From: Fonticula alba ATCC 38817
Lineage: Eukaryota > Protista > Nucleariida
Reading direction: 5' to 3' (one strand)
Assembly (NCBI GenBank): GCA_000388065.2
Contig: KB932214.1
DNA: 38,136 bases
The position numbers and the translations under genes were made by a program. The notes below the pieces were generated by a model that was given only the letters and a program-made list of their open reading frames with translations, did not search any database and was not told the origin of the DNA. This document shows, one piece after another, positions 20,336 through 28,853 of the stretch; within the stretch, counting starts at the first letter, position 1, and each line of letters begins with the position of its first letter.

Positions 20336-23300
20336 ATGACCGACGGCATGATGCGCTCCGAGCAGATGGCGCTCACCCAGATGTACATCCCATCGGATGC
20401 GGCCCACTCGACCATTTCGGCGCTGGGCATCTTCGGCATGACCGAGCTCCGTGACGTGCGTCCCCCTGCTTGCCGCGTGTGTATGTGTGTGTGTGTGTGT
20501 GTGTGTGTCTGTCGCTTCCGCTCTCATCTAACTTGTGGCCCCCTCGCTCTTCCCTTCGCCCCCCCCCCCTCCCCCTCACAGCTCAACAGCGATGCCAACC
20601 CCTTCCAGCGCCGGTACACCACCCAGATCCGTCAGTGTGACGAGCTCGAGCGCATCCTCCGTACGTAGTGTCCGTTCTCCACCCGCCTGGCCTGGTCTGC
20701 CCGCGATCTCGGCGGCCGCCGCTGTCCATGCGCATTCCCACGGTCAGTCAGCAACTCACCCTCTCGACACCCACGCACACGCACACGCACACACGCGGCA
20801 AGCAGGCTACCTCAGGGAGGAGTGCACCGCGGCCGGACTCCAGCCGGAAGAACCATACAACCTGCCGGCCGACTGGACCATCCAGACGCCGCAGGTGCTG
20901 ACCGAGCTCGGCCAGCGCCTGGCCCACCTGGAACGCGAGGTCCGCGGCGGGGCCACCAGCGAGCAGAGCCTCCGCCGGAGTCGCCACGAGTTGCTGTCCC
21001 TGCGGGCCATCACCCGCGCGGTGGACCGGTTCTTCGAGGATGAGCCGGCCCAGGCGGCCATGGGGGCCACCCTGCTGAAGCCGGCGTCCGTCGACAACCT
21101 GGACCACATCCAGCCACGCAACTATCGCTTTCACAATGCCCAGGCGCAGGACGACCACCATCTGCTGCTGGGCACCGGGGCCGGCCATGCCGAGGCCATC
21201 GAGCTGGGCGACCTGACGCAAACCGAGTCGCCCACCCTGCAGGACATGGACTCCTACTCGCCCACCCTGCAGCCGATCAATCCGTCCTCGCTCAGGTAGG
21301 TGCCCCTGCGGCCGCGGGCCCCGTCGGCTTTTTGGCCCCCCCCCCCTCCCCCCCCTGACCCGCTGCTTGCCGGACTGTGCTCCGTTCTAACCTGGCCGCT
21401 CTGATCTTCCCCTCGCCGTTGCTCCGTGCCTGCCTCTGCTGCCTTGCTTCACCCTCCCCTGCTGCGCACCGCTCCCGGGGCGGGCGGGGGGCTCTGTGCC
21501 GGTCCGCGCCAACCCTGACAGCTTCATCTGCGGCATCGTCGAGCGCACCAAGCGCTCGGCCATGGAGTCGGTCCTGTGGCGCTCGCTCCGGGGGAACCTC
21601 TACTCCAACTTCTCCAGCTTGGAGGTCCTGATCCAGGAGGACGAGGACCTGGACGCCGATGTGGCCAGCCTGCACGGGCCCGGCCCCGACGGGTCCGCCG
21701 ACGCCAAGTGGCTTCCGGTGCGTCTGCCCACCTGCAGCTCCCTCCGCGTCGCTGGCGCGGCCTTGCACCAAGGCCCGGGGGGGGGGGGGGGGGGGGGGAA
21801 GGGAGCCCCCCTCACCTCCAACAAACACCCACACACAAACACACACACCCACAAGTACAAACAAACACGCGTGCTCCCGCCGCCGATCTCCCTCTCCCAC
21901 GACCCTGTGCCTGGTTGACTGGCAGAATGTCATGTACGATTGCTTGGTGGTGCTGGTCAAATCCGGATCCCTGCTGGACCGCGCCCAGAAGGTGGTCACC
22001 GCGTACGTGGCCCAAAGGGGCGCCCCTCCTCGCCCCTTCGCCGTCCGTGGCAAGCTCGCTCCCGCTCGCGCGCGCGGTGCTCCTGCCTTGCCGCCCGCTC
22101 TCTGACTCCGGACGCCCTGCGCAGCTTCGGTGCCTCTGTATACCCCTGCCCGGGAAATGGATCCGACCGGGAGGAACTCCGCAGCCAGATCGGCATTCGC
22201 ATTGACGACCTCCGACGGGTACGCCATCGCCATCATCACCATTCACAATCCGGCCCCCTGTCTGCCGGGGCCGGCGCCGAGGCCGCCCTTGCCCATCTAA
22301 CACATGTTGCTGGGGGGGGCGGGGGACGTGGTGGGACCACGAAAAAATGGGGGGGAAAAATCATCATGCAACCAGGTCCACAGCCAGACGGTGGCCCACC
22401 GCAAACGCACCCTCGCGCAGGTGAGCGAGGCCCTGCCGGAATGGCAACGCCTCGTCGCCCGGGAGAAGGTCACCTACTCCGAGATGAACAAGCTGTGCTT
22501 CGATGTGACATCTAGCTGCCTGATCGGCGAGGCGTGGGTACCACGGCGCGACCTGCCCGAGCTGAGCAGACGCCTTGACGAGGCATCCGTACGTTCACCG
22601 AGCCCCGGGCTTTTGTTGGTGGCCCTGCCCTCCTCCTCGTCGCCGTGCCTGACCCATCTCACATGCGTATGCCGCCGCCGACAACAACACCTCGGCACCC
22701 ATGCCCTGCCCTGCCCTGCCCTGCCCTGCCCTGGTGCAGGCCAAGGCCAACAGCGAGGTGCCCACCATTTTGCGGACCCTCTCCACCCGGCAGACACCGC
22801 CCACCTTCTACCGGACCAACAGCTTCACCTCCGGCTTCCAGGCGCTCATTGACTCGTATGGCATCAGTCGCTATGGCGAGGTCAATCCCGGCGTCTATGC
22901 CATCATCACCTTCCCCTTCCTCTTTGCCGTGATGTTCGGCGACCTGGGGCATGGCTTCATCATCACCATCATCGCGCTGGCCATGATGGCGTACGCCAAG
23001 CCGCTGGCGCGCCTGTCCCGCGGCAACGAGGTGCGCTCGCCGTGTCCGCCCGCCCGCCCGCCCGTCCCTCTTGGCAAAAAGGGCCCGCGGCCCGCGGGCC
23101 CATTCCCTTCTCGCCGTGTGCCCCTCTCGCCCTGGCTGACAAGAGGGGAAAACCCAAAAACTCGCCTCGTCCCCCCCCCCCCCGCCCGCCTTCGCGGCTG
23201 ATAGATGGTCGGCACCTTCTTCCACGGCCGGTACATCATCCTCCTGATGGGGCTCTTCTCCCTGTACACCGGGCTCATCTACAATGACATCTTCTCCAAG

Positions 23301-24066
23301 GGCATGCCTTTGGGCAAGAGCGGCTTTGACTTTCCCCCGCCCGCGGTGCGTGCCCCCCCCCCTCCCCCCCCCCACCCCCACCCCGCCCTTGGGGCTGGCA
23401 TCCTGCGCGCCTCCCCTGCCAGCCGCCAAGCTGACCCTCGGCTCCTATGTGTGCTCCCGCCCGGCCCCCCTCTCGCCCCACCTGCCGACCTCTGGCGCGC
23501 CCTGCCGGCGGGCCGCCCCGTCCCTTCCCCCTCTGTGGCCCTGCTGCCCGTCGACCCTGCCCGCGCGCGCGCGCGCGCGCGCGCCGGGGCCCCTCCAGCC
23601 CGGGCAGCAGGTCGTCCACGGCACCTTCAACGGGCACATCTACACCTTCGGCCTGGACCACGCCTGGCACGGGTCCGACAACATGCTGATCTTCATGAAC
23701 TCCTACAAGATGAAGATGTCCATCGTGCTCGGTGTCATCCAGATGCTCTTCGGCATGGGCCTGCAGGTGGTCAATTATCTGAACATCGGCGACCGGCTGG
23801 ACATCATCATGGATTTCATCCCGCGGCTGCTATTCATGGTTTGCATCTTCGGCTACCTCATCTGCATGATTGTCTACAAGTGGACGGTCGACTGGTCGAC
23901 CCGGCCCACGGCGCCCTCGCTGCTGAACATGCTCATCAATATGTTCCTCTCGCCGGGGCACGTCCCGGCCGATGAGCGCCTGTATTCCGGCCAGGTGCGT
24001 GCGCGAGTCTCGCCTGTGCCGCCCCGGCTACCCGACAGCCCGTCTGGCCGCGCCCTCCCGCACGCA

Positions 24067-24098
<32 letters not shown>

Positions 24099-24965
24099 CA
24101 CACAATAGGCCACAGCAACCGCCAGCACGACCGACACTGACACATACCGAACCACCCACCCCCTGTGCATGTGCACGCGTAGGAAACCGTCCAGCTGGTT
24201 CTGGTGGTTGTGGCCCTCGTGGCCATTCCGTGGATGCTGCTGACCAAGCCGCTGGTCCTGCGCGCGCGGCACAAGCGCCAGCTTCGCCGCAACGCCGGCC
24301 AGGGCCTGCTCGGGACCTACACCCAGCCGGGGCCGGTGGAGGCCCCGGGCGGCGATGCGCTGTCCTCCGACTCGGATGATGCCAGTGCGTCGGACGTCCC
24401 GCTGACCGGGCTCGGCCCGGGGCCGGCCGCGCTTCACCCGAACCCGGGCCCGGAAACCGCGGCACCCCTGATGGGCGCCACCGGCGGCCTGGCCCCGGTG
24501 GAGTCCAGCCTCTCGCGGCGCCTGGCCGTGGCCGAGGCCACCGACGGGGCCCTCTACATGGACATGGAGGCCGGGGCCGAGGAGGAGTTCGACTTCGGCG
24601 AGATCTTCATCCACCAGGCCATCCACACGATTGAATTTTGCCTGGGCGCCATTTCCAGCACGGCCTCCTACCTGCGGCTGTGGGCCCTGTCGCTGGCGCA
24701 CGCCCAGCTGTCCACCGTCCTCTGGGACATGACCCTGCAGATGATCCTCAACCTCGAGGACCCGATCGTGGCCGGCGTGCTGCTGGTGGCCGGCTTCGCC
24801 GTGTGGATCACCCTCACCGTGGCCATCATGTGCATGATGGAGGGCCTGTCGGCCTTCCTGCATGCGCTGCGTCTGCATTGGGTGGAGTTCAACAACAAGT
24901 TCTTCTTCGGCGATGGCCGCGCCTTTGAGCCCTTCTCTTGGGAGCGTGTCTTCGATGAGGAGTGA
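20336..24965 (+). CDS. ATP6V0A: V-type H+-ATPase V0 subunit a (Vph1/Stv1/ATP6V0A family); join(20336..20455,20582..20660,20806..21295,21522..21717,21926..22002,22125..22218,22376..22588,22740..23030,23205..23345,23599..23994,24183..24965), about 959 aa
   Basis: Hallmarks: MMRSEQM, ELRDLN, NPFQRRY...[29 protein letters not shown]...YGEVNPG...[37 protein letters not shown] (essential Arg), [17 protein letters not shown]. Ten frame-preserving GT-AG introns (2880 nt). Confidence 0.95.
22702..22731 (+). repeat. (TGCCC)6 in V-ATPase intron 7
   Basis: Directly visible just before the acceptor at 22739. Confidence 0.9.
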
Positions 24966-25154
24966 GCCGGCCCATGTGTCCCTGCCGCCGCCTCCCCCCG
25001 CCCCCCCCCCTTCCCCGGGGCGAGGCGGCGTGGCCATGCACATGCGCACGCATACCCACACATACATACAGACACACATTGTGTACATGCCCTGCCCTTG
25101 AAAAATATACCTACGTATGCGTGCGCACGAATTCCACCCAGGTGAGCATGAGCG

Positions 25155-25166
25155 TGTGTGTGCGCG

Positions 25167-25222
<56 letters not shown>
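25155..25222 (+). repeat. Compound (TG)n-(CG)10-(AG)20 microsatellite downstream of the V-ATPase gene
   Basis: Directly visible. Confidence 0.95.
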
Positions 25223-25225
<3 letters not shown>

Positions 25226-25783
25226 GACATGGCCAGCAGGGGGTGCTGGTCGCACGTGTCTGCATCTCTTGATGTCTCAGTGGTCGGTCGGCTGCTCCTT
25301 CTCTTTCCTTTTCATCCTCGCCCCCCGGGAGAAGGGCACGCCCGCGCGCGGAAAAAAAATCACCCACAGTTGCTTGGTGTGGGAGATGCAAATGCGGGTC
25401 GGGGTCACGTGCGCTGCGTGCGCTTTTCACGCATGGTATGCACGCTGGCCGATCGAGGCACGGGCGCCGGCGCGGCCTTCTTGTGCCAGCACGATCCGCC
25501 CGGGGGCCAGGCCTCTCGTTCATTCGCATCCGAGCCGCCACCCGACCACGCCCTCTGTCCCTTTCTCCGCCCCCCCCCCCACACACACGCATTCCCTTCC
25601 CTCGCCCGCTGCCCCATCCCTTGCGCCCCGGCTGCATTGGACCCAGCCCAAGCGCCGCCCCCCCCCTCCACACACACACACACACGCGCACACGCGCACA
25701 CATACACACGCAGGCAGAGTGGTACAGGCGTGTAGCCACACGTGCCAGCACAGCCACAAGCACGGGCACAACCACAAGCACCA

Positions 25784-28299
25784 ATGCTCCGTCGTAGCAT
25801 GAGCGCCGCCCTCCGGCGCGTGGACCATGGCCGCGTCCTGCCGGGGCTGGCGGCTCGCGGACTCGCCTCCGCGGCCGGGCCGGGCCCGGCGCCCCCGGCC
25901 CCCGGCAGCAGCTCGACCGCCCCGAAGAAGAACCTCATCAGCATCAGCGAATTTACCCCCCGGCGGAATGTCCCCTCGCCCGGGGTGCGGATCCCGCGGA
26001 TCTTCCTGCACAGCGCCGGCGGCCGGGCCCCCGGGAGTGCCCTGTCCGGCACTCTGATCCCCGGGGCCAAGATTGCCCTGGACGAGCGCAGTGCTCACCA
26101 GATCACCCGGGTGCTGCGGTTCCGGCAAAATGAACTGGTGGATCTGTTCGACGGGGCGGACGGCTTCGACTACCGGGCACGTCTGCTGCCGAAGGAGGAG
26201 TTCCCCTCGGTGGAACTGGCCCGGCGCATTGCCGAGATGCCGTTCATCGACGACACCGGCAAGGTCCAGCGGAAGAAATTCCACACCCGCGTCCGGGCCC
26301 AGAAGGGCCGGCCGCGAGACACCTACGTCGAGGTGTTGAACCGGGTGCGCACTCTTTCCCCGGCCCCGCCTTTGCCCTGCTCCTTCCCTCGTTCCTTTCC
26401 TCCCTGTGCTCGCATCTGGATGTTCTTCCGGGGGGGGGNNNNNNNNNNNNNNNNNNNNNNNNNNNNNNNNNNNNNNNNNNNNNNNNNNNNNNNNNNNNNN
26501 NNNNNNNNNNNNNNNNNNNNNNNNNNNNNNNNNNNNNNNNNNNNNNNNNNNNNNNNNNNNNNNNNNNNNNNNNNNNNNNNNNNNNNNNNNNNNNNNNNNN
26601 NNNNNGGCCCGTGACTGACCCGCCCCTCTGCTCCCGCTCTCCCGCCTCCTGGTCCCGCTCGCCTGCCCCCCTGGTCCCGCTCACCCGCCCCCGCCCCCCC
26701 CCCCTCCGCTCCCGCTCGCCCGGCCGCCTGGCCAACCAGCGCCTCCCCCGGTCGCAGGAGATCCCGACGCGCATCCACGCGGCGCTGGTCCTCTCCCCGC
26801 GGCTGGACAATGTGGAGCCCTTCATCCAGCGCGCCGTGGAGATGGGCGCCGCGTCCATCATTCCCCTGCTGCCACTGGCCGAGGGCAAGCGCCCGGACTG
26901 GGTGGACCCGGCGCAGCGGGAGCTCTTGACGCAGGAGCGCCTGCTGTCGTGGCGCCTGGCCGCGGCCAAGGCCGCCGAGGCGGCCGGCCGGTCGGTTGTC
27001 CCGCCGGTGGTCATGTCCACCGGGCCGGACGGCCAGCACCTGATGCCCTTCTTCTTCGGGGACTGGACGACGGCCGTGTCGCGGGCGGTGCGGAATGCGC
27101 GCGCCAGCGCCGGCCCCGGCCCCGGCCCCGGGTCCGGCCCCCCGGGCCCGGCGCCCCAGCTGACGGCCAAGGTGTCCACCTGCAGTGCGGATCTCCTGCG
27201 CCACCTGCCGGATGTGGCCAACGCCCTGGAGGAGCATGACCGGCAGTTCCGCTCGGACTCCGAGGATGAGGCCGGCGGCCCGGGCAGGCTGGCGGTGCCG
27301 CAGCCGGCCGTCGTGCCGGCCGGCATGACCTACGAATCGGTGGCCAACCTCAGCGAGTACTACTACGAGGGGCTGGACTATTCGGACCCCGGGACCTGGA
27401 TCCAAAGCCCCAAGGGCCCGGTCAATCCGACCACCGCGCTGCCCATCGGCGACTATGACGACGCCATTGCCCTGACGGATGCCCACCGGTTCCTGGTCCG
27501 ACAGGTGGACTGGCCATTGCGGGACTCGCTGGCCCTGACCAGCCCCCCGGCCGGGGCCTGCCTGCTGTGCTACGACCCGCTGGACACCCAGGAGCAGCCG
27601 TCGCTGCTGCCGCTGCTGTCGGCCGGCCTCCGGGCAGGCGGCGACCTGGCCGAGGCCGGGGGGCGCCCGGGGCGCCGGGGCCGCGGCGCACCCGCCGGCC
27701 GTCGGCACGCCGGCGCCAGCCGCCTTGAGCAGGAGGCCCCCCCTGCCCAGGTGGACGAGTCGCGGCCGGGGGAGGCCCGCCGCGGCCGGGGCCGGCGTAG
27801 CCCTCCCCGCCCGGGGGGGGCCGCTGTGGCCGGGCACGAGTCGGCCCCCGAGTCCGACGTGGCGGAGGCCGCGCCCACCGAGGGGGCGAGTGGCCAGGCC
27901 CGGCGGGGCCGCGCGCGTCGCGCCGCCCCGGCGGCCGAGGTGCCCGGGTCTGACTTCGACAGTGGGCCGGACTCCGACGGGGAGCGGCCCCCCTCCGACC
28001 TGGGGCACGGCCACCACGAGGAGGAGGAGGAGGACATTTCGTACGATGCGCTGACCGGCGACACGGCCGGCGCGCTGGATCTGGCCAGCGAGCAGGAGGT
28101 CCGCGATGTGTTCTTCCTGCTCGGGGCTGACATTGGCATCTCGGCGGTCGAGCGGGCGCACCTGAACCGCCTGGCCACAGACCGCGACGCGTGCGTGCCC
28201 TGGGCCCGGGGGCACTTCGGCCCGCGGCTCCTCCGGCCGGAGAGCGCCCTCGGCACCCTGGCCACGCTGGCGCACTCCCTGGCCGGGAACTTCGACTGA
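25784..28299 (+). CDS. RsmE-like (16S rRNA m3U1498) SPOUT methyltransferase homologue with N-terminal presequence and large insertions; join(25784..26344,26740..28299), about 706 aa; the intron spans an assembly gap
   Basis: Colinear with recalled E. coli RsmE: RIPRIF...IALDERSAHQITRVLR...VDLFDG; IHAALVLSPRLDNVEPFIQRAVEMGAASIIPL; WRLAAAKAAEAAGRSVVPPV; FFLLGADIGIS..E; FGPRLLRPESA. The acceptor could be 26758, and a hidden exon in the gap cannot be excluded. Confidence 0.8.
26439..26605. other. Assembly gap (N run) inside the RsmE-like intron
   Basis: N bases. Confidence 1.
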
Positions 28300-28853
28300 A
28301 GGGCGCCGCCGGGGGAGCAGGGAAAACACACGATATAGACGCAGCCCGCCATCCCCCTGTGCCCTGTGTGTGTGTGTGTGTGCGCGCCTGACCCTGGTTC
28401 GGCGCGCGAGGAGAGGGGGAAACAGAGAAAGCACAAGAGAGAGAGAGAGCACAAGAGAGCGCACACAGCAACAAGAGAGGGGAGAAGGAAGTTGGTTGTA
28501 TTTGTATGTGGGGGGATTGTGTTTGGGGGAAAGGGGGGGGGGGGAAGAAGGACACACAAGGGCGGGGGAGTCTGAGGGAAGAGGGAGAGAGAGCGCACGC
28601 ATACTGCGCGCACGCATGAGAAAGAAGGAGGGAGAGAAAGGAAGGGAGGGAGTGCGATCGCGATCTCTCCTGCCCTGCGCTTCTCCTCGCCGCCCCCCCC
28701 CTGCTCTCGCTCTCCCGCTCCCCCCCGCCGCTCGCCCGCCACAGGCAGGGGGGCGCGAGGGAAGGAGCGAAAAAGCGCGGGAGGGAGGGGGAAAGAGAGA
28801 GAGAGAGAGAGAGACAGAGAAAGAGAGAAGGGAAGCCCAGCTTCCACGCCACT

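What the first reader, a model, noticed from the sequence alone, without database searches (positions are those of the whole stretch)
25784..26900. Bacterial-type RsmE homologue with a mitochondrial-like presequence in a probable opisthokont
Seen: leader MLRRSMSAALRRVDHGRVLPGLAARGLASAA, then a domain starting RIPRIF that follows recalled E. coli RsmE (MRIPRIY...IALCEDAANHIGRVLR...LFDG) closely; the gene has a spliceosomal intron. Known: RsmE makes m3U1498 in helix 44 of 16S rRNA and is mainly bacterial; I do not know of animal or yeast orthologues. Inference: a retained endosymbiont gene or a proteobacterial transfer retargeted to the mitoribosome, implying an unreported mitochondrial SSU modification or assembly factor.
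Basis: partly seen in the sequence, partly recalled or inferred. Interest (0 to 1): 0.76.

Follow-up and report, generated by a model that had tools for sequence, protein, structure and literature searches.

The report
Divergent RsmE-like methyltransferase gene in Fonticula
The amoeba Fonticula alba has a real, expressed nuclear gene for a very divergent, insertion-laden relative of the bacterial ribosomal RNA methyltransferase RsmE, which probably acts in mitochondria; I found no counterpart in any other eukaryote, and its activity is untested.

Summary
The gene is Fonticula alba H696_05778 (706 aa). Exon 1 is 25784-26344, the GT..AG intron is 26345-26739, and exon 2 is 26740-28299.

- **Gap:** The assembly gap (26439-26605) lies wholly inside the intron. 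Transcript contigs from two runs join 26344 to 26740 directly, so the protein is unaffected.
- **Homology:** The match to RsmE is real but distant. Pfam and NCBIfam matches fall below their curated cut-offs. A profile of 79 proteobacterial RsmE proteins scores 61.5 bits in three colinear pieces (best of 1000 shuffles: 6.8). A predicted model aligns with E. coli RsmE at Z 21.6.
- **Differences:** A 67-residue N-terminal extension carries an Arg-rich, acid-poor leader. About 350 residues of low-complexity insertions split the methyltransferase domain. Several near-invariant residues are changed (GPEGG to GADIG, Gln to Ala).
- **Relatives:** An exhaustive search of 1.84 billion proteins found only bacterial-size RsmE relatives (53 bits or less) and no eukaryotic orthologue.

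The origin (endosymbiont or later transfer) is unresolved. Mitochondrial location and methylation activity are inferred, not shown. UniRef already auto-names the protein RsmE, but I found no paper on it. The scan noted the split domain before, on this same window (s1-066033).

The parts
25784..26344 (+). Exon 1 (aa 1-187): leader, linker and PUA-like domain
   Evidence: First ATG of the frame. The spliced translation equals P0001. Transcript contigs cover 25718-26343.
25784..25876 (+). Presequence-like leader (aa 1-31), followed by a Pro/Gly/Ser linker up to aa 67
   Evidence: The leader has 6 Arg, 1 Asp and no Glu. Helix 2-14 is predicted. An ARGL|AS stretch resembles an R-3 cleavage site. 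Bacterial RsmE proteins start at about aa 68. The next in-frame Met after M6 is M152, inside the domain, so the extension must be translated.
25985..26344 (+). PUA-like RNA-binding domain (aa 68-187), with a 38-aa insertion at aa 138-175 (26195-26308)
   Evidence: Pfam PUA_4 E 0.008, below cut-off. NF008692 positions 2-55, E 6e-7. Own profiles score 27-42 bits. R72, L99, V110-L111-R112, F122 and G124 are kept.
26345..26739 (+). Spliceosomal intron (GTGCG...AG) holding the assembly gap 26439-26605
   Evidence: The joint 26343/4 to 26739/40 is seen in contigs of two runs, with zero depth inside. The true length is unknown because the gap length is only estimated.
26740..28299 (+). Exon 2 (aa 188-706 plus stop)
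   Evidence: Transcript contigs cover it contiguously over 26739-28193 with no joints. It is identical to P0001.
26758..27024 (+). First half of the SPOUT domain (aa 194-282)
   Evidence: PF04452 positions 2-76, E 0.0011-0.0018, below cut-off. NF008692 positions 76-151, E 4.7e-7. E194, Q217, E221, G223, P229, W258, E267, G270 and R271 are kept. K to R at 218 and invariant Q to A at 268.
27025..28080 (+). Low-complexity insertions (aa 283-634) inside the SPOUT domain. A short strand island at aa 459-476 (27553-27606) stands for strand beta9.
   Evidence: This stretch has no counterpart in 102 bacterial RsmE proteins. pLDDT is under 50 except at 460-480. It is present in the mRNA contigs.
28081..28296 (+). 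C-terminal knot half of the SPOUT domain (aa 635-706)
   Evidence: Not found by Pfam or by sequence search of solved structures. Against the 79-sequence RsmE profile, aa 620-706 score 12.2 bits when searched alone and aa 639-705 score 6.1 bits as the third colinear segment of the whole protein. None of 2000 shuffles of the piece reaches 12.2, the best being 4.8. The model aligns to E. coli RsmE through to residue 706.
28123..28137 (+). Altered SAM loop beta10/alpha6: GADIG in place of GPEGG
   Evidence: In 102 proteobacterial RsmE proteins the five positions read G 101, P 93, E 100, G 97, G 101.
28216..28248 (+). Kept SAM and dimer loop beta11/alpha7: FGPRLLRPESA against the bacterial LGPRxLRTETA
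   Evidence: G681, P682, R683, L685, R686, E688 and A690 are kept. T to P at 687 and T to S at 689. The roles of these residues are described for Lpg2936 in PMC5699498.

Best explanation
This is a nuclear, intron-bearing, transcribed gene of Fonticula alba for a highly divergent member of the RsmE family (PUA-like domain plus SPOUT knot domain).

Shown here:
- The gene model, the splicing and the position of the gap.
- The colinear homology and the RsmE-like predicted fold over the whole bacterial protein length.
- The extra N-terminal 67 residues and the roughly 350 residues of insertions in loops.
- The absence of any closer relative among 1.84 billion proteins.

Inferred:
- The Arg-rich leader sends the protein into mitochondria. 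Fonticula has no plastid.
- The protein dimerises like other RsmE proteins.
- It binds the nearly finished mitochondrial small ribosomal subunit at helix 44.
- It then either transfers a methyl group from SAM to N3 of the uridine equivalent to U1498, or, if the altered SAM loop has disabled it, acts only as a late assembly or checking factor.

My odds: RsmE-family homologue 0.95; mitochondrial 0.75; still an active m3U methyltransferase about 0.5.
For: - **Gene model:** It is identical to P0001.
- **Transcription:** Spliced transcript contigs come from two runs, the intron has no depth, and exon 2 is continuous.
- **Curated profiles:** NF008692 gives colinear hits at E 6e-7 and 4.7e-7.
- **Own profile:** 79 proteobacterial RsmE proteins score 61.5 bits in three colinear segments, against 6.8 for the best of 1000 shuffles. 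The C-terminal piece alone scores 12.2 bits, against 4.8 for the best of 2000 shuffles.
- **Exhaustive search:** All 23 other hits are 194-269 aa, and every named one is a bacterial RsmE. The best hit sits in a bacterial gene neighbourhood.
- **Fold:** The AlphaFold model built with alignment A1 has a core pLDDT of about 90. It aligns with E. coli RsmE 4e8b at Z 21.6, rmsd 2.5, 236 of 242 residues, model range 70-706. The next non-RsmE SPOUT family scores Z 10.9. The top 28 Foldseek hits are all RsmE. The ESM Atlas's own model gives TM 0.78 to a bacterial RsmE cluster.
- **Conservation:** Most near-invariant residues are kept, including the Arg and Glu of the beta11/alpha7 loop. Their roles are given in PMC5699498 and PMC1829167.
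- **Leader:** Its composition fits a presequence, and no alternative start exists.
- **Host-like gene:** GC3 is 0.91, like the neighbouring V-ATPase gene. The intron has a GTGCG donor. The gene lies between the V-ATPase a-subunit and IQGAP genes on a 542-kb contig.
Against: - Both Pfam domains, TIGR00046 and NF008692 score below their curated cut-offs.
- Four positions that are invariant or nearly so in 102 bacterial RsmE proteins are changed: K218R, Q268A, E651D and G652I.
- The predicted structure was built from an alignment of RsmE proteins, so its fold is not independent evidence. The single-sequence model was useless, with pLDDT 38.
- Targeting rests on composition and a motif read by eye. 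No predictor or experiment was available.
- There is no orthologue with which to test purifying selection.
- Expression appears low (word depth about 3-9, a poor measure of expression), and the run type is only guessed to be RNA, although the spliced form argues for RNA.
Confidence: 0.7

Rival explanations
1. It is a pseudo-methyltransferase. The protein keeps the RsmE fold, dimer surface and RNA-binding PUA domain but can no longer bind SAM or catalyse. It serves only as a mitoribosome small-subunit assembly or quality-control factor, as inactive SPOUT proteins do in trypanosome large-subunit assembly.
For: - The SAM loop GPEGG is GADIG, with a bulky Ile where 97 of 102 sequences have Gly. 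The invariant Gln (102 of 102) is Ala.
- Large disordered insertions could add binding surfaces.
- SPOUT proteins in Trypanosoma mitoribosome assembly intermediates appear among the structural matches, at Z about 9-10.
- The branch is very long, 3.87 changes per site.
Against: - The beta11/alpha7 loop, which carries the adenine contacts and the proposed catalytic Arg, is kept almost intact (G681, R683, L685, R686, E688).
- SAM contacts in RsmE are mostly through main-chain atoms, so side-chain changes need not abolish binding.
- Glu to Asp and Lys to Arg are conservative changes.
Confidence: 0.3
2. It is a lineage-specific bacterial gene transfer with no mitochondrial ribosome role. The gene was taken up from prey bacteria. 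It now acts elsewhere in the cell on another RNA, or is drifting towards loss.
For: - There is no eukaryotic orthologue; all relatives found are bacterial.
- Fonticula feeds on bacteria (my own knowledge).
- Divergence is extreme and low-complexity insertions are present.
Against: - The gene has an intron, host codon usage and a 67-aa leader that must be translated.
- About 30 of 40 near-invariant RsmE positions survive at about 30% overall identity, which argues for continued selection on an RsmE-like function.
- No near bacterial donor exists: the best hit is 53 bits, and the genome scan found none.
- A transfer would not in any case exclude a mitochondrial role.
Confidence: 0.1
3. It is an artefact: bacterial contamination, a misassembly across the gap, or a chance open frame in GC-rich DNA.
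For: - There is an assembly gap inside the locus.
- The GC-rich DNA carries long open frames on every strand, for example a 764-aa antisense ORF.
Against: - Spliced transcripts bridge the gap region exactly at GT..AG.
- The eukaryotic neighbours lie on the same 542-kb contig.
- The profile score is far above that of shuffles.
Confidence: 0.02

Closest known systems
Bacterial RsmE (YggJ; COG1385, PF04452 + PF20260), the 16S rRNA m3U1498 methyltransferase; structures 4e8b, 1nxz, 5o96, 5vm8
   Same: - The order is the same: a PUA-like domain followed by a SPOUT knot domain.
- The predicted fold matches over residues 3-244 of the E. coli protein (Z 21.6).
- The hallmark residues R72, VLR110-112, F122/G124, E221/G223, W258, G270/R271 and the GPRxLRxE(T/S)A loop are kept.
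   Different: - It is 706 aa rather than about 245 aa.
- It has a 67-aa leader and linker.
- It has a 38-aa insertion in the PUA domain and about 350 aa of insertions in the SPOUT domain.
- GPEGG is GADIG, the invariant Gln is Ala, and the invariant Lys is Arg.
- It is encoded in a eukaryotic nucleus and has an intron.
- It scores below every curated family cut-off.
Plant and algal RsmE homologues (for example Arabidopsis AT1G50000), the presumed chloroplast 16S m3U1498 enzyme
   Same: Both are nuclear-encoded RsmE-family proteins with an organelle-type N-terminal extension. The language-model search puts P0001 nearest to diatom and green-algal RsmE clusters, but at 0.86-0.87 this is only a lead.
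   Different: - Those proteins are about 350 aa and meet Pfam's thresholds.
- They occur in plastid-bearing lineages, where m3U has been detected in chloroplast 16S rRNA (10.1101/2024.06.14.598963).
- Fonticula has no plastid.
- None of them appeared among the sequence hits at E up to 0.001.
- I could not fetch their sequences for a tree.
Mitochondrial SPOUT proteins of ribosome assembly (MRM1/MRM3; inactive SPOUT factors in trypanosome mitoribosome large-subunit intermediates, 6yxx, 7aoi)
   Same: They have the SPOUT knot fold, are imported into mitochondria and act on late ribosome assembly intermediates. Some are catalytically dead scaffolds.
   Different: They belong to other SPOUT families (TrmH/SpoU type), act on the large subunit and lack a PUA domain. 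Their structural match is only Z 9-10, against 21.6 for RsmE.

Membership tests
RsmE (COG1385 / PF04452+PF20260 / TIGR00046) | Score at or above the curated family thresholds | tested here: not met
   PF04452 scores 18.3-19 bits against a cut-off of 23.9. PUA_4 scores 14.3-16.7 against 23.9. TIGR00046 scores 14.6 and 10.9 against 41. NF008692 scores 29.1 and 29.4 against 196.
RsmE (COG1385 / PF04452+PF20260 / TIGR00046) | Significant colinear homology over the N-terminal PUA-like domain and both halves of the SPOUT domain | tested here: met
   The profile of 79 proteobacterial RsmE proteins scores 61.5 bits in three colinear segments (profile positions 7-51, 60-147, 179-238), against 6.8 for the best of 1000 shuffles. 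The C-terminal piece scores 12.2 bits, against 4.8 for the best of 2000 shuffles. In phmmer against 1.84e9 proteins, all hits are RsmE-size and the named ones are RsmE.
RsmE (COG1385 / PF04452+PF20260 / TIGR00046) | PUA + alpha/beta knot fold superposable on solved RsmE structures | tested here: met
   VIA-align gives Z 21.6, rmsd 2.5 and 236 of 242 residues against 4e8b, with other SPOUT families at 10.9 or less. The top 28 Foldseek hits are RsmE. Caveat: the model was built from an RsmE alignment.
RsmE (COG1385 / PF04452+PF20260 / TIGR00046) | SAM-binding loop beta11/alpha7 (LGPRxLRTETA) with the proposed catalytic Arg | tested here: met
   The loop reads FGPRLLRPESA at aa 680-690. G, P, R, L, R, E and A are identical to positions that are 93-101 of 102 conserved. 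Their roles are given in PMC5699498.
RsmE (COG1385 / PF04452+PF20260 / TIGR00046) | SAM-binding loop beta10/alpha6 GPEGG | tested here: not met
   The loop reads GADIG at aa 649-653. P to A (A occurs in 7 of 102), E to D (E in 100 of 102), G to I (G in 97 of 102).
RsmE (COG1385 / PF04452+PF20260 / TIGR00046) | Invariant Gln of helix alpha3 (Q141/Q143; dimer contact and proposed active-site residue) | tested here: not met
   Position 268 is Ala where 102 of 102 bacterial sequences have Gln. The residue's role is given in PMC1829167 and PMC5699498.
RsmE (COG1385 / PF04452+PF20260 / TIGR00046) | Homodimer that methylates N3 of U1498 in assembled small subunits | not testable with these tools
   This needs biochemistry. 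The dimer-contact residues R218 (for Lys), E221, R683, R686, E688 and S689 (for Thr) are kept or conservatively changed.
Mitochondrial presequence proteins | N-terminal extension beyond the bacterial start, Arg-rich and acid-poor, able to form a helix, with an R-2/R-3 type cleavage motif | tested here: inconclusive
   The extension is 67 aa. Residues 1-31 hold 6 Arg and 1 Asp. Helix 2-14 is predicted at low confidence. The hydrophobic moment is moderate (0.38). An ARGL|AS stretch was read by eye. No trained predictor was available.
Mitochondrial presequence proteins | Demonstrated import or mitochondrial localisation | not testable with these tools
   No localisation or proteome data for Fonticula were found.

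The most novel reading that the evidence does not exclude
Fonticula alba mitochondria carry an RsmE-dependent m3U at the U1498-equivalent of helix 44. This decoding-centre methylation has not been reported for any opisthokont mitoribosome. Its enzyme has been rebuilt with large disordered insertions and a changed SAM loop. The gene is either the last surviving copy of an ancestral mitochondrial rsmE in this part of the tree, or a bacterial gene re-recruited to the organelle.
Probability: 0.35. Interest if true: 0.6.

Novelty: new variant of a known kind. Interest (0 to 1): 0.45.

Why it matters
Animal and yeast mitochondrial small-subunit rRNAs are not known to carry m3U at the U1498 position. 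The open literature I searched treats RsmE as bacterial with a few plant members. A working RsmE in the mitochondria of a close relative of fungi would add a modification to the known set for opisthokont mitoribosomes. It would also show that the set of bacterial-type ribosome maturation enzymes kept by mitochondria differs between lineages.

If the protein is instead inactive, it would be a small-subunit example of a methyltransferase turned into an assembly scaffold. In either case the protein shows how far a knotted SPOUT domain can be split by insertions (about 350 residues between its two halves) while keeping its core motifs.

The significance is moderate. It is a single gene in a single species, databases already auto-name it, and every functional step is inferred.

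Tried and rejected
- **Word-index protein searches.** Searches with exon 2, with aa 60-300 alone, and with aa 60-300 in full-length context found only the protein itself.
- **Bacterial genome scan.** A scan with aa 60-300 found no relative by tblastn.
- **Single-sequence AlphaFold.** The model was unusable, with pLDDT 37.7.
- **C-terminal knot piece (P0001:620-706 in Pfam, 630-706 against solved structures).** Pfam and sequence search of solved structures found nothing relevant. Only the custom profile and the fold comparison recovered it.
- **Tree for alpha- versus gamma-proteobacterial origin.** The loci fetched with alignment A2 were all beta- or gammaproteobacterial, because hits are ranked by likeness to the first row. 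The Fonticula branch is too long to place. I therefore draw no conclusion on origin. The best hits are all GC-rich bacteria, which may reflect shared amino-acid composition.
- **2026 RNA run.** Run X11 (organism B) gave only 4 reads, on a poly-C tract, so it says nothing.
- **Literature.** Searches for RsmE with mitoribosome, protists, Fonticula or the Acanthamoeba mitochondrial proteome found nothing on a mitochondrial RsmE.
- **My first acceptor guess.** I first placed the acceptor at 26757/26758; the transcript joint and P0001 correct it to 26739/26740.
Full report
**What is there.** The window is GC-rich eukaryotic DNA, 58-79% GC in 2-kb windows. A word-index search with the downstream exon returned one protein, P0001. 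This is 'hypothetical protein H696_05778 [Fonticula alba]', 706 aa, on a 542-kb contig, and UniRef auto-names it 16S rRNA (uracil(1498)-N(3))-methyltransferase. Joining 25784-26344 to 26740-28299 and translating gives P0001 letter for letter. The organism is therefore Fonticula alba, a bacterivorous amoeba on the fungal side of the opisthokonts, and the gene model is already public.

**The gap.** The N run at 26439-26605 had to be tested first.
- Three small 2012 runs of the same study hold the locus as contigs.
- In two of them, a contig joins 26343/4 directly to 26739/40. It skips 395 letters with GT..AG ends.
- All three runs have zero depth over 26356-26676.
- The run type is only guessed to be RNA, but a spliced form with an empty intron is what RNA gives.
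- The gap is therefore inside the intron and no coding letters are missing.
- Bacterial RsmE profiles align straight across the exon junction at aa 187/188.
- The donor GTGCG fits the donor pattern that another note of this scan reports for this genome (s1-066092).
- Exon 2 is covered contiguously from 26739 to 28193 with no further joints. The long insertions described below are therefore in the mRNA and are not unrecognised introns.

**Is it RsmE?** By curated thresholds it is not.
- Pfam PUA_4 scores 14-17 bits and PF04452 scores 18-19 bits. Both are under their 23.9-bit cut-offs, and only the first half of PF04452 matches.
- NCBIfam's RsmE models match colinearly but weakly. NF008692 gives E 6e-7 for positions 2-55 and 4.7e-7 for positions 76-151, far below its cut-off.
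- Single-sequence matches to solved RsmE chains have E-values of 0.14-0.4.
- The C-terminal 77-87 residues match nothing relevant in Pfam or in the sequences of solved structures.

By homology it clearly is RsmE.
- An exhaustive phmmer run against 1.84 billion representative proteins gave 23 hits other than the protein itself at E up to 0.001. All are 194-269 aa, and the best scores 53 bits.
- Every hit that carries a name is a bacterial RsmE, from Gammaproteobacteria or Pseudomonadota MAGs or from Thermomicrobium.
- The five hits I scanned (P0002-P0005 and P0010) match NF008692 at 229-298 bits.
- The best hit lies between a primase gene and other bacterial genes.
- I built a profile from 79 beta- and gammaproteobacterial RsmE genes fetched from GTDB genomes. 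It scores P0001 at 61.5 bits in three colinear segments, against 6.8 for the best of 1000 shuffles.
- The C-terminal piece alone scores 12.2 bits, against 4.8 for the best of 2000 shuffles.
- An AlphaFold model made with alignment A1 has a core pLDDT of about 90 (aa 90-140, 180-285) and 70-86 in the C-terminal knot.
- That model superposes on E. coli RsmE 4e8b at Z 21.6, rmsd 2.5 Å, over 236 of 242 residues and model range 70-706. The best non-RsmE SPOUT protein reaches Z 10.9.
- Foldseek's top 28 hits are all RsmE structures.
- The model leans on an RsmE alignment, so I count it as consistency rather than independent proof. The ESM Atlas's own single-sequence model gives the same answer, TM 0.78 over residues 27-705.

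**Anatomy, relative to 102 proteobacterial RsmE proteins.**
- aa 1-67 are extra.
- The PUA-like domain runs from aa 68 and has a 12-aa and a 38-aa insertion.
- The first half of the SPOUT domain is aa 194-282.
- About 350 residues of Ala/Gly/Pro/Arg-rich, low-confidence sequence (aa 283-634) follow. They are interrupted by a short strand island at aa 459-476 that stands for strand beta9.
- The knot half is aa 635-706.

Kept residues include R72, L99, V110-L111-R112, F122, G124, E194, Q217, E221, G223, P229, W258, E267, G270 and R271. Almost the whole beta11/alpha7 loop is kept too (G681, P682, R683, L685, R686, E688, A690). In Lpg2936 that loop makes the adenine contacts, the dimer contacts and carries the proposed catalytic Arg (PMC5699498; PMC1829167).

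Changed residues:

| Position | Bacterial residue (of 102) | Fonticula |
|---|---|---|
| 218 | Lys (102) | Arg |
| 268 | Gln (102) | Ala |
| 650 (loop GPEGG) | Pro (93) | Ala |
| 651 (loop GPEGG) | Glu (100) | Asp |
| 652 (loop GPEGG) | Gly (97) | Ile |
| 687 | Thr (95) | Pro |
| 689 | Thr (100) | Ser |
| 698 | Gln (90) | Ala |

The beta10/alpha6 loop therefore reads GADIG. This confirms the scan's other note on this window (s1-066033).

**Where it probably acts.**
- Bacterial RsmE proteins begin at about aa 68.
- After M1 and M6 the next in-frame Met is M152, inside the PUA domain, so the extension is necessarily part of any functional product.
- Residues 1-31 hold six Arg, one Asp and no Glu, are rich in Ala, Leu and Ser, and are predicted (weakly) to be helical at 2-14.
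- They end in ARGL|AS, which resembles the R-3 cleavage pattern. A Pro/Gly/Ser linker follows.
- Fonticula has no plastid (my knowledge), so a mitochondrial address is the natural reading. This is inference from composition only.

**Genuinely nuclear and long resident.**
- The gene has a spliceosomal intron.
- Its GC3 is 0.91, like the exons of the V-ATPase a-subunit gene just upstream, which have 0.86-0.91.
- The IQGAP gene lies downstream.

**Origin.** No eukaryotic orthologue and no long form appeared in the exhaustive search, in three word searches or in the bacterial genome scan. In a tree with its 22 best full-length hits and 40 named proteobacterial sequences, the Fonticula branch is 3.87 changes per site against a median of 0.78, and no supported group holds it. 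The sample lacks alphaproteobacteria, cyanobacteria and plastid-type RsmE. The best hits are all from GC-rich bacteria, so shared composition may contribute to their ranking. I cannot tell retention of an endosymbiont gene from a later transfer out of prey bacteria; I put them near even. Another note of this scan reports a nuclear gene for a mitochondrial-type TatB in this genome (s1-065355, not tested here). That would fit a lineage that keeps bacterial-type mitochondrial functions.

**Mechanism.** RsmE acts as a dimer on nearly mature 30S subunits. The PUA domain of one protomer holds the RNA, and the SPOUT knot of the other presents SAM to U1498 of helix 44 (PMC9508554). The Fonticula protein keeps the PUA motifs, the dimer-contact residues and the main SAM/catalytic loop. 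The best-supported reading is the same job on the mitochondrial small subunit. SAM contacts in RsmE are largely through main-chain atoms, so GADIG need not abolish binding. An Ile in place of a Gly in a tight cofactor loop, together with the lost Gln, still leaves a real chance (about half) that the protein is now a non-catalytic binder.

[quoted passage not shown] The plant homologue AT1G50000 is only a presumed chloroplast enzyme. Searches combining RsmE with mitoribosome, m3U with mitochondrial rRNA, or Fonticula with methyltransferase found no description of a mitochondrial RsmE. The family assignment itself is already in UniRef. I rate this a new variant of a known kind, of moderate interest. 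It is a single-species, strongly remodelled RsmE that points to a testable mitochondrial rRNA modification or assembly factor not yet reported.

Noticed in passing
window 20535-24965 (+): A multi-exon gene for the V-ATPase 116-kDa a subunit lies just upstream. ORF pieces match PF01496 at positions 36-124, 429-471, 488-614 and 621-814.
   Followed up: partly
window 25150-25240, 25570-25700, 26640-26710: Microsatellites and homopolymer tracts flank the gene and fill its intron: (GA)n/(CT)n, (CA)n and poly-C. Reads of an unrelated 2026 run (X11) stick only to the poly-C tract.
   Followed up: no
window 27105-27211, 27961-28067, 28496-28700: Contig word depth spikes to 50-160 at short low-complexity stretches (the Gly-Pro and Glu/Asp runs). 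Loose ends there lead into other transcripts. These are shared simple repeats, not higher expression of this gene.
   Followed up: partly
window 26323-28617 (-) and others: Very long open frames occur on the antisense strand and in other frames over the same gene (764, 476, 425 and 360 aa). This is expected in 68-74% GC DNA, where stop codons are rare. ORF length is no evidence of a gene here.
   Followed up: no
window 26345-26350: The intron donor is GTGCGC, which fits the GT[G/A/T]CG donor rule that another note reports for this genome (s1-066092).
   Followed up: partly
L081:4225-7199: In the metagenomic contig of the best bacterial hit, rsmE directly follows the primase gene dnaG and overlaps the start of a LEA_2-domain gene by 4 bases. 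This differs from the era/rnc neighbourhood described for many bacteria.
   Followed up: no
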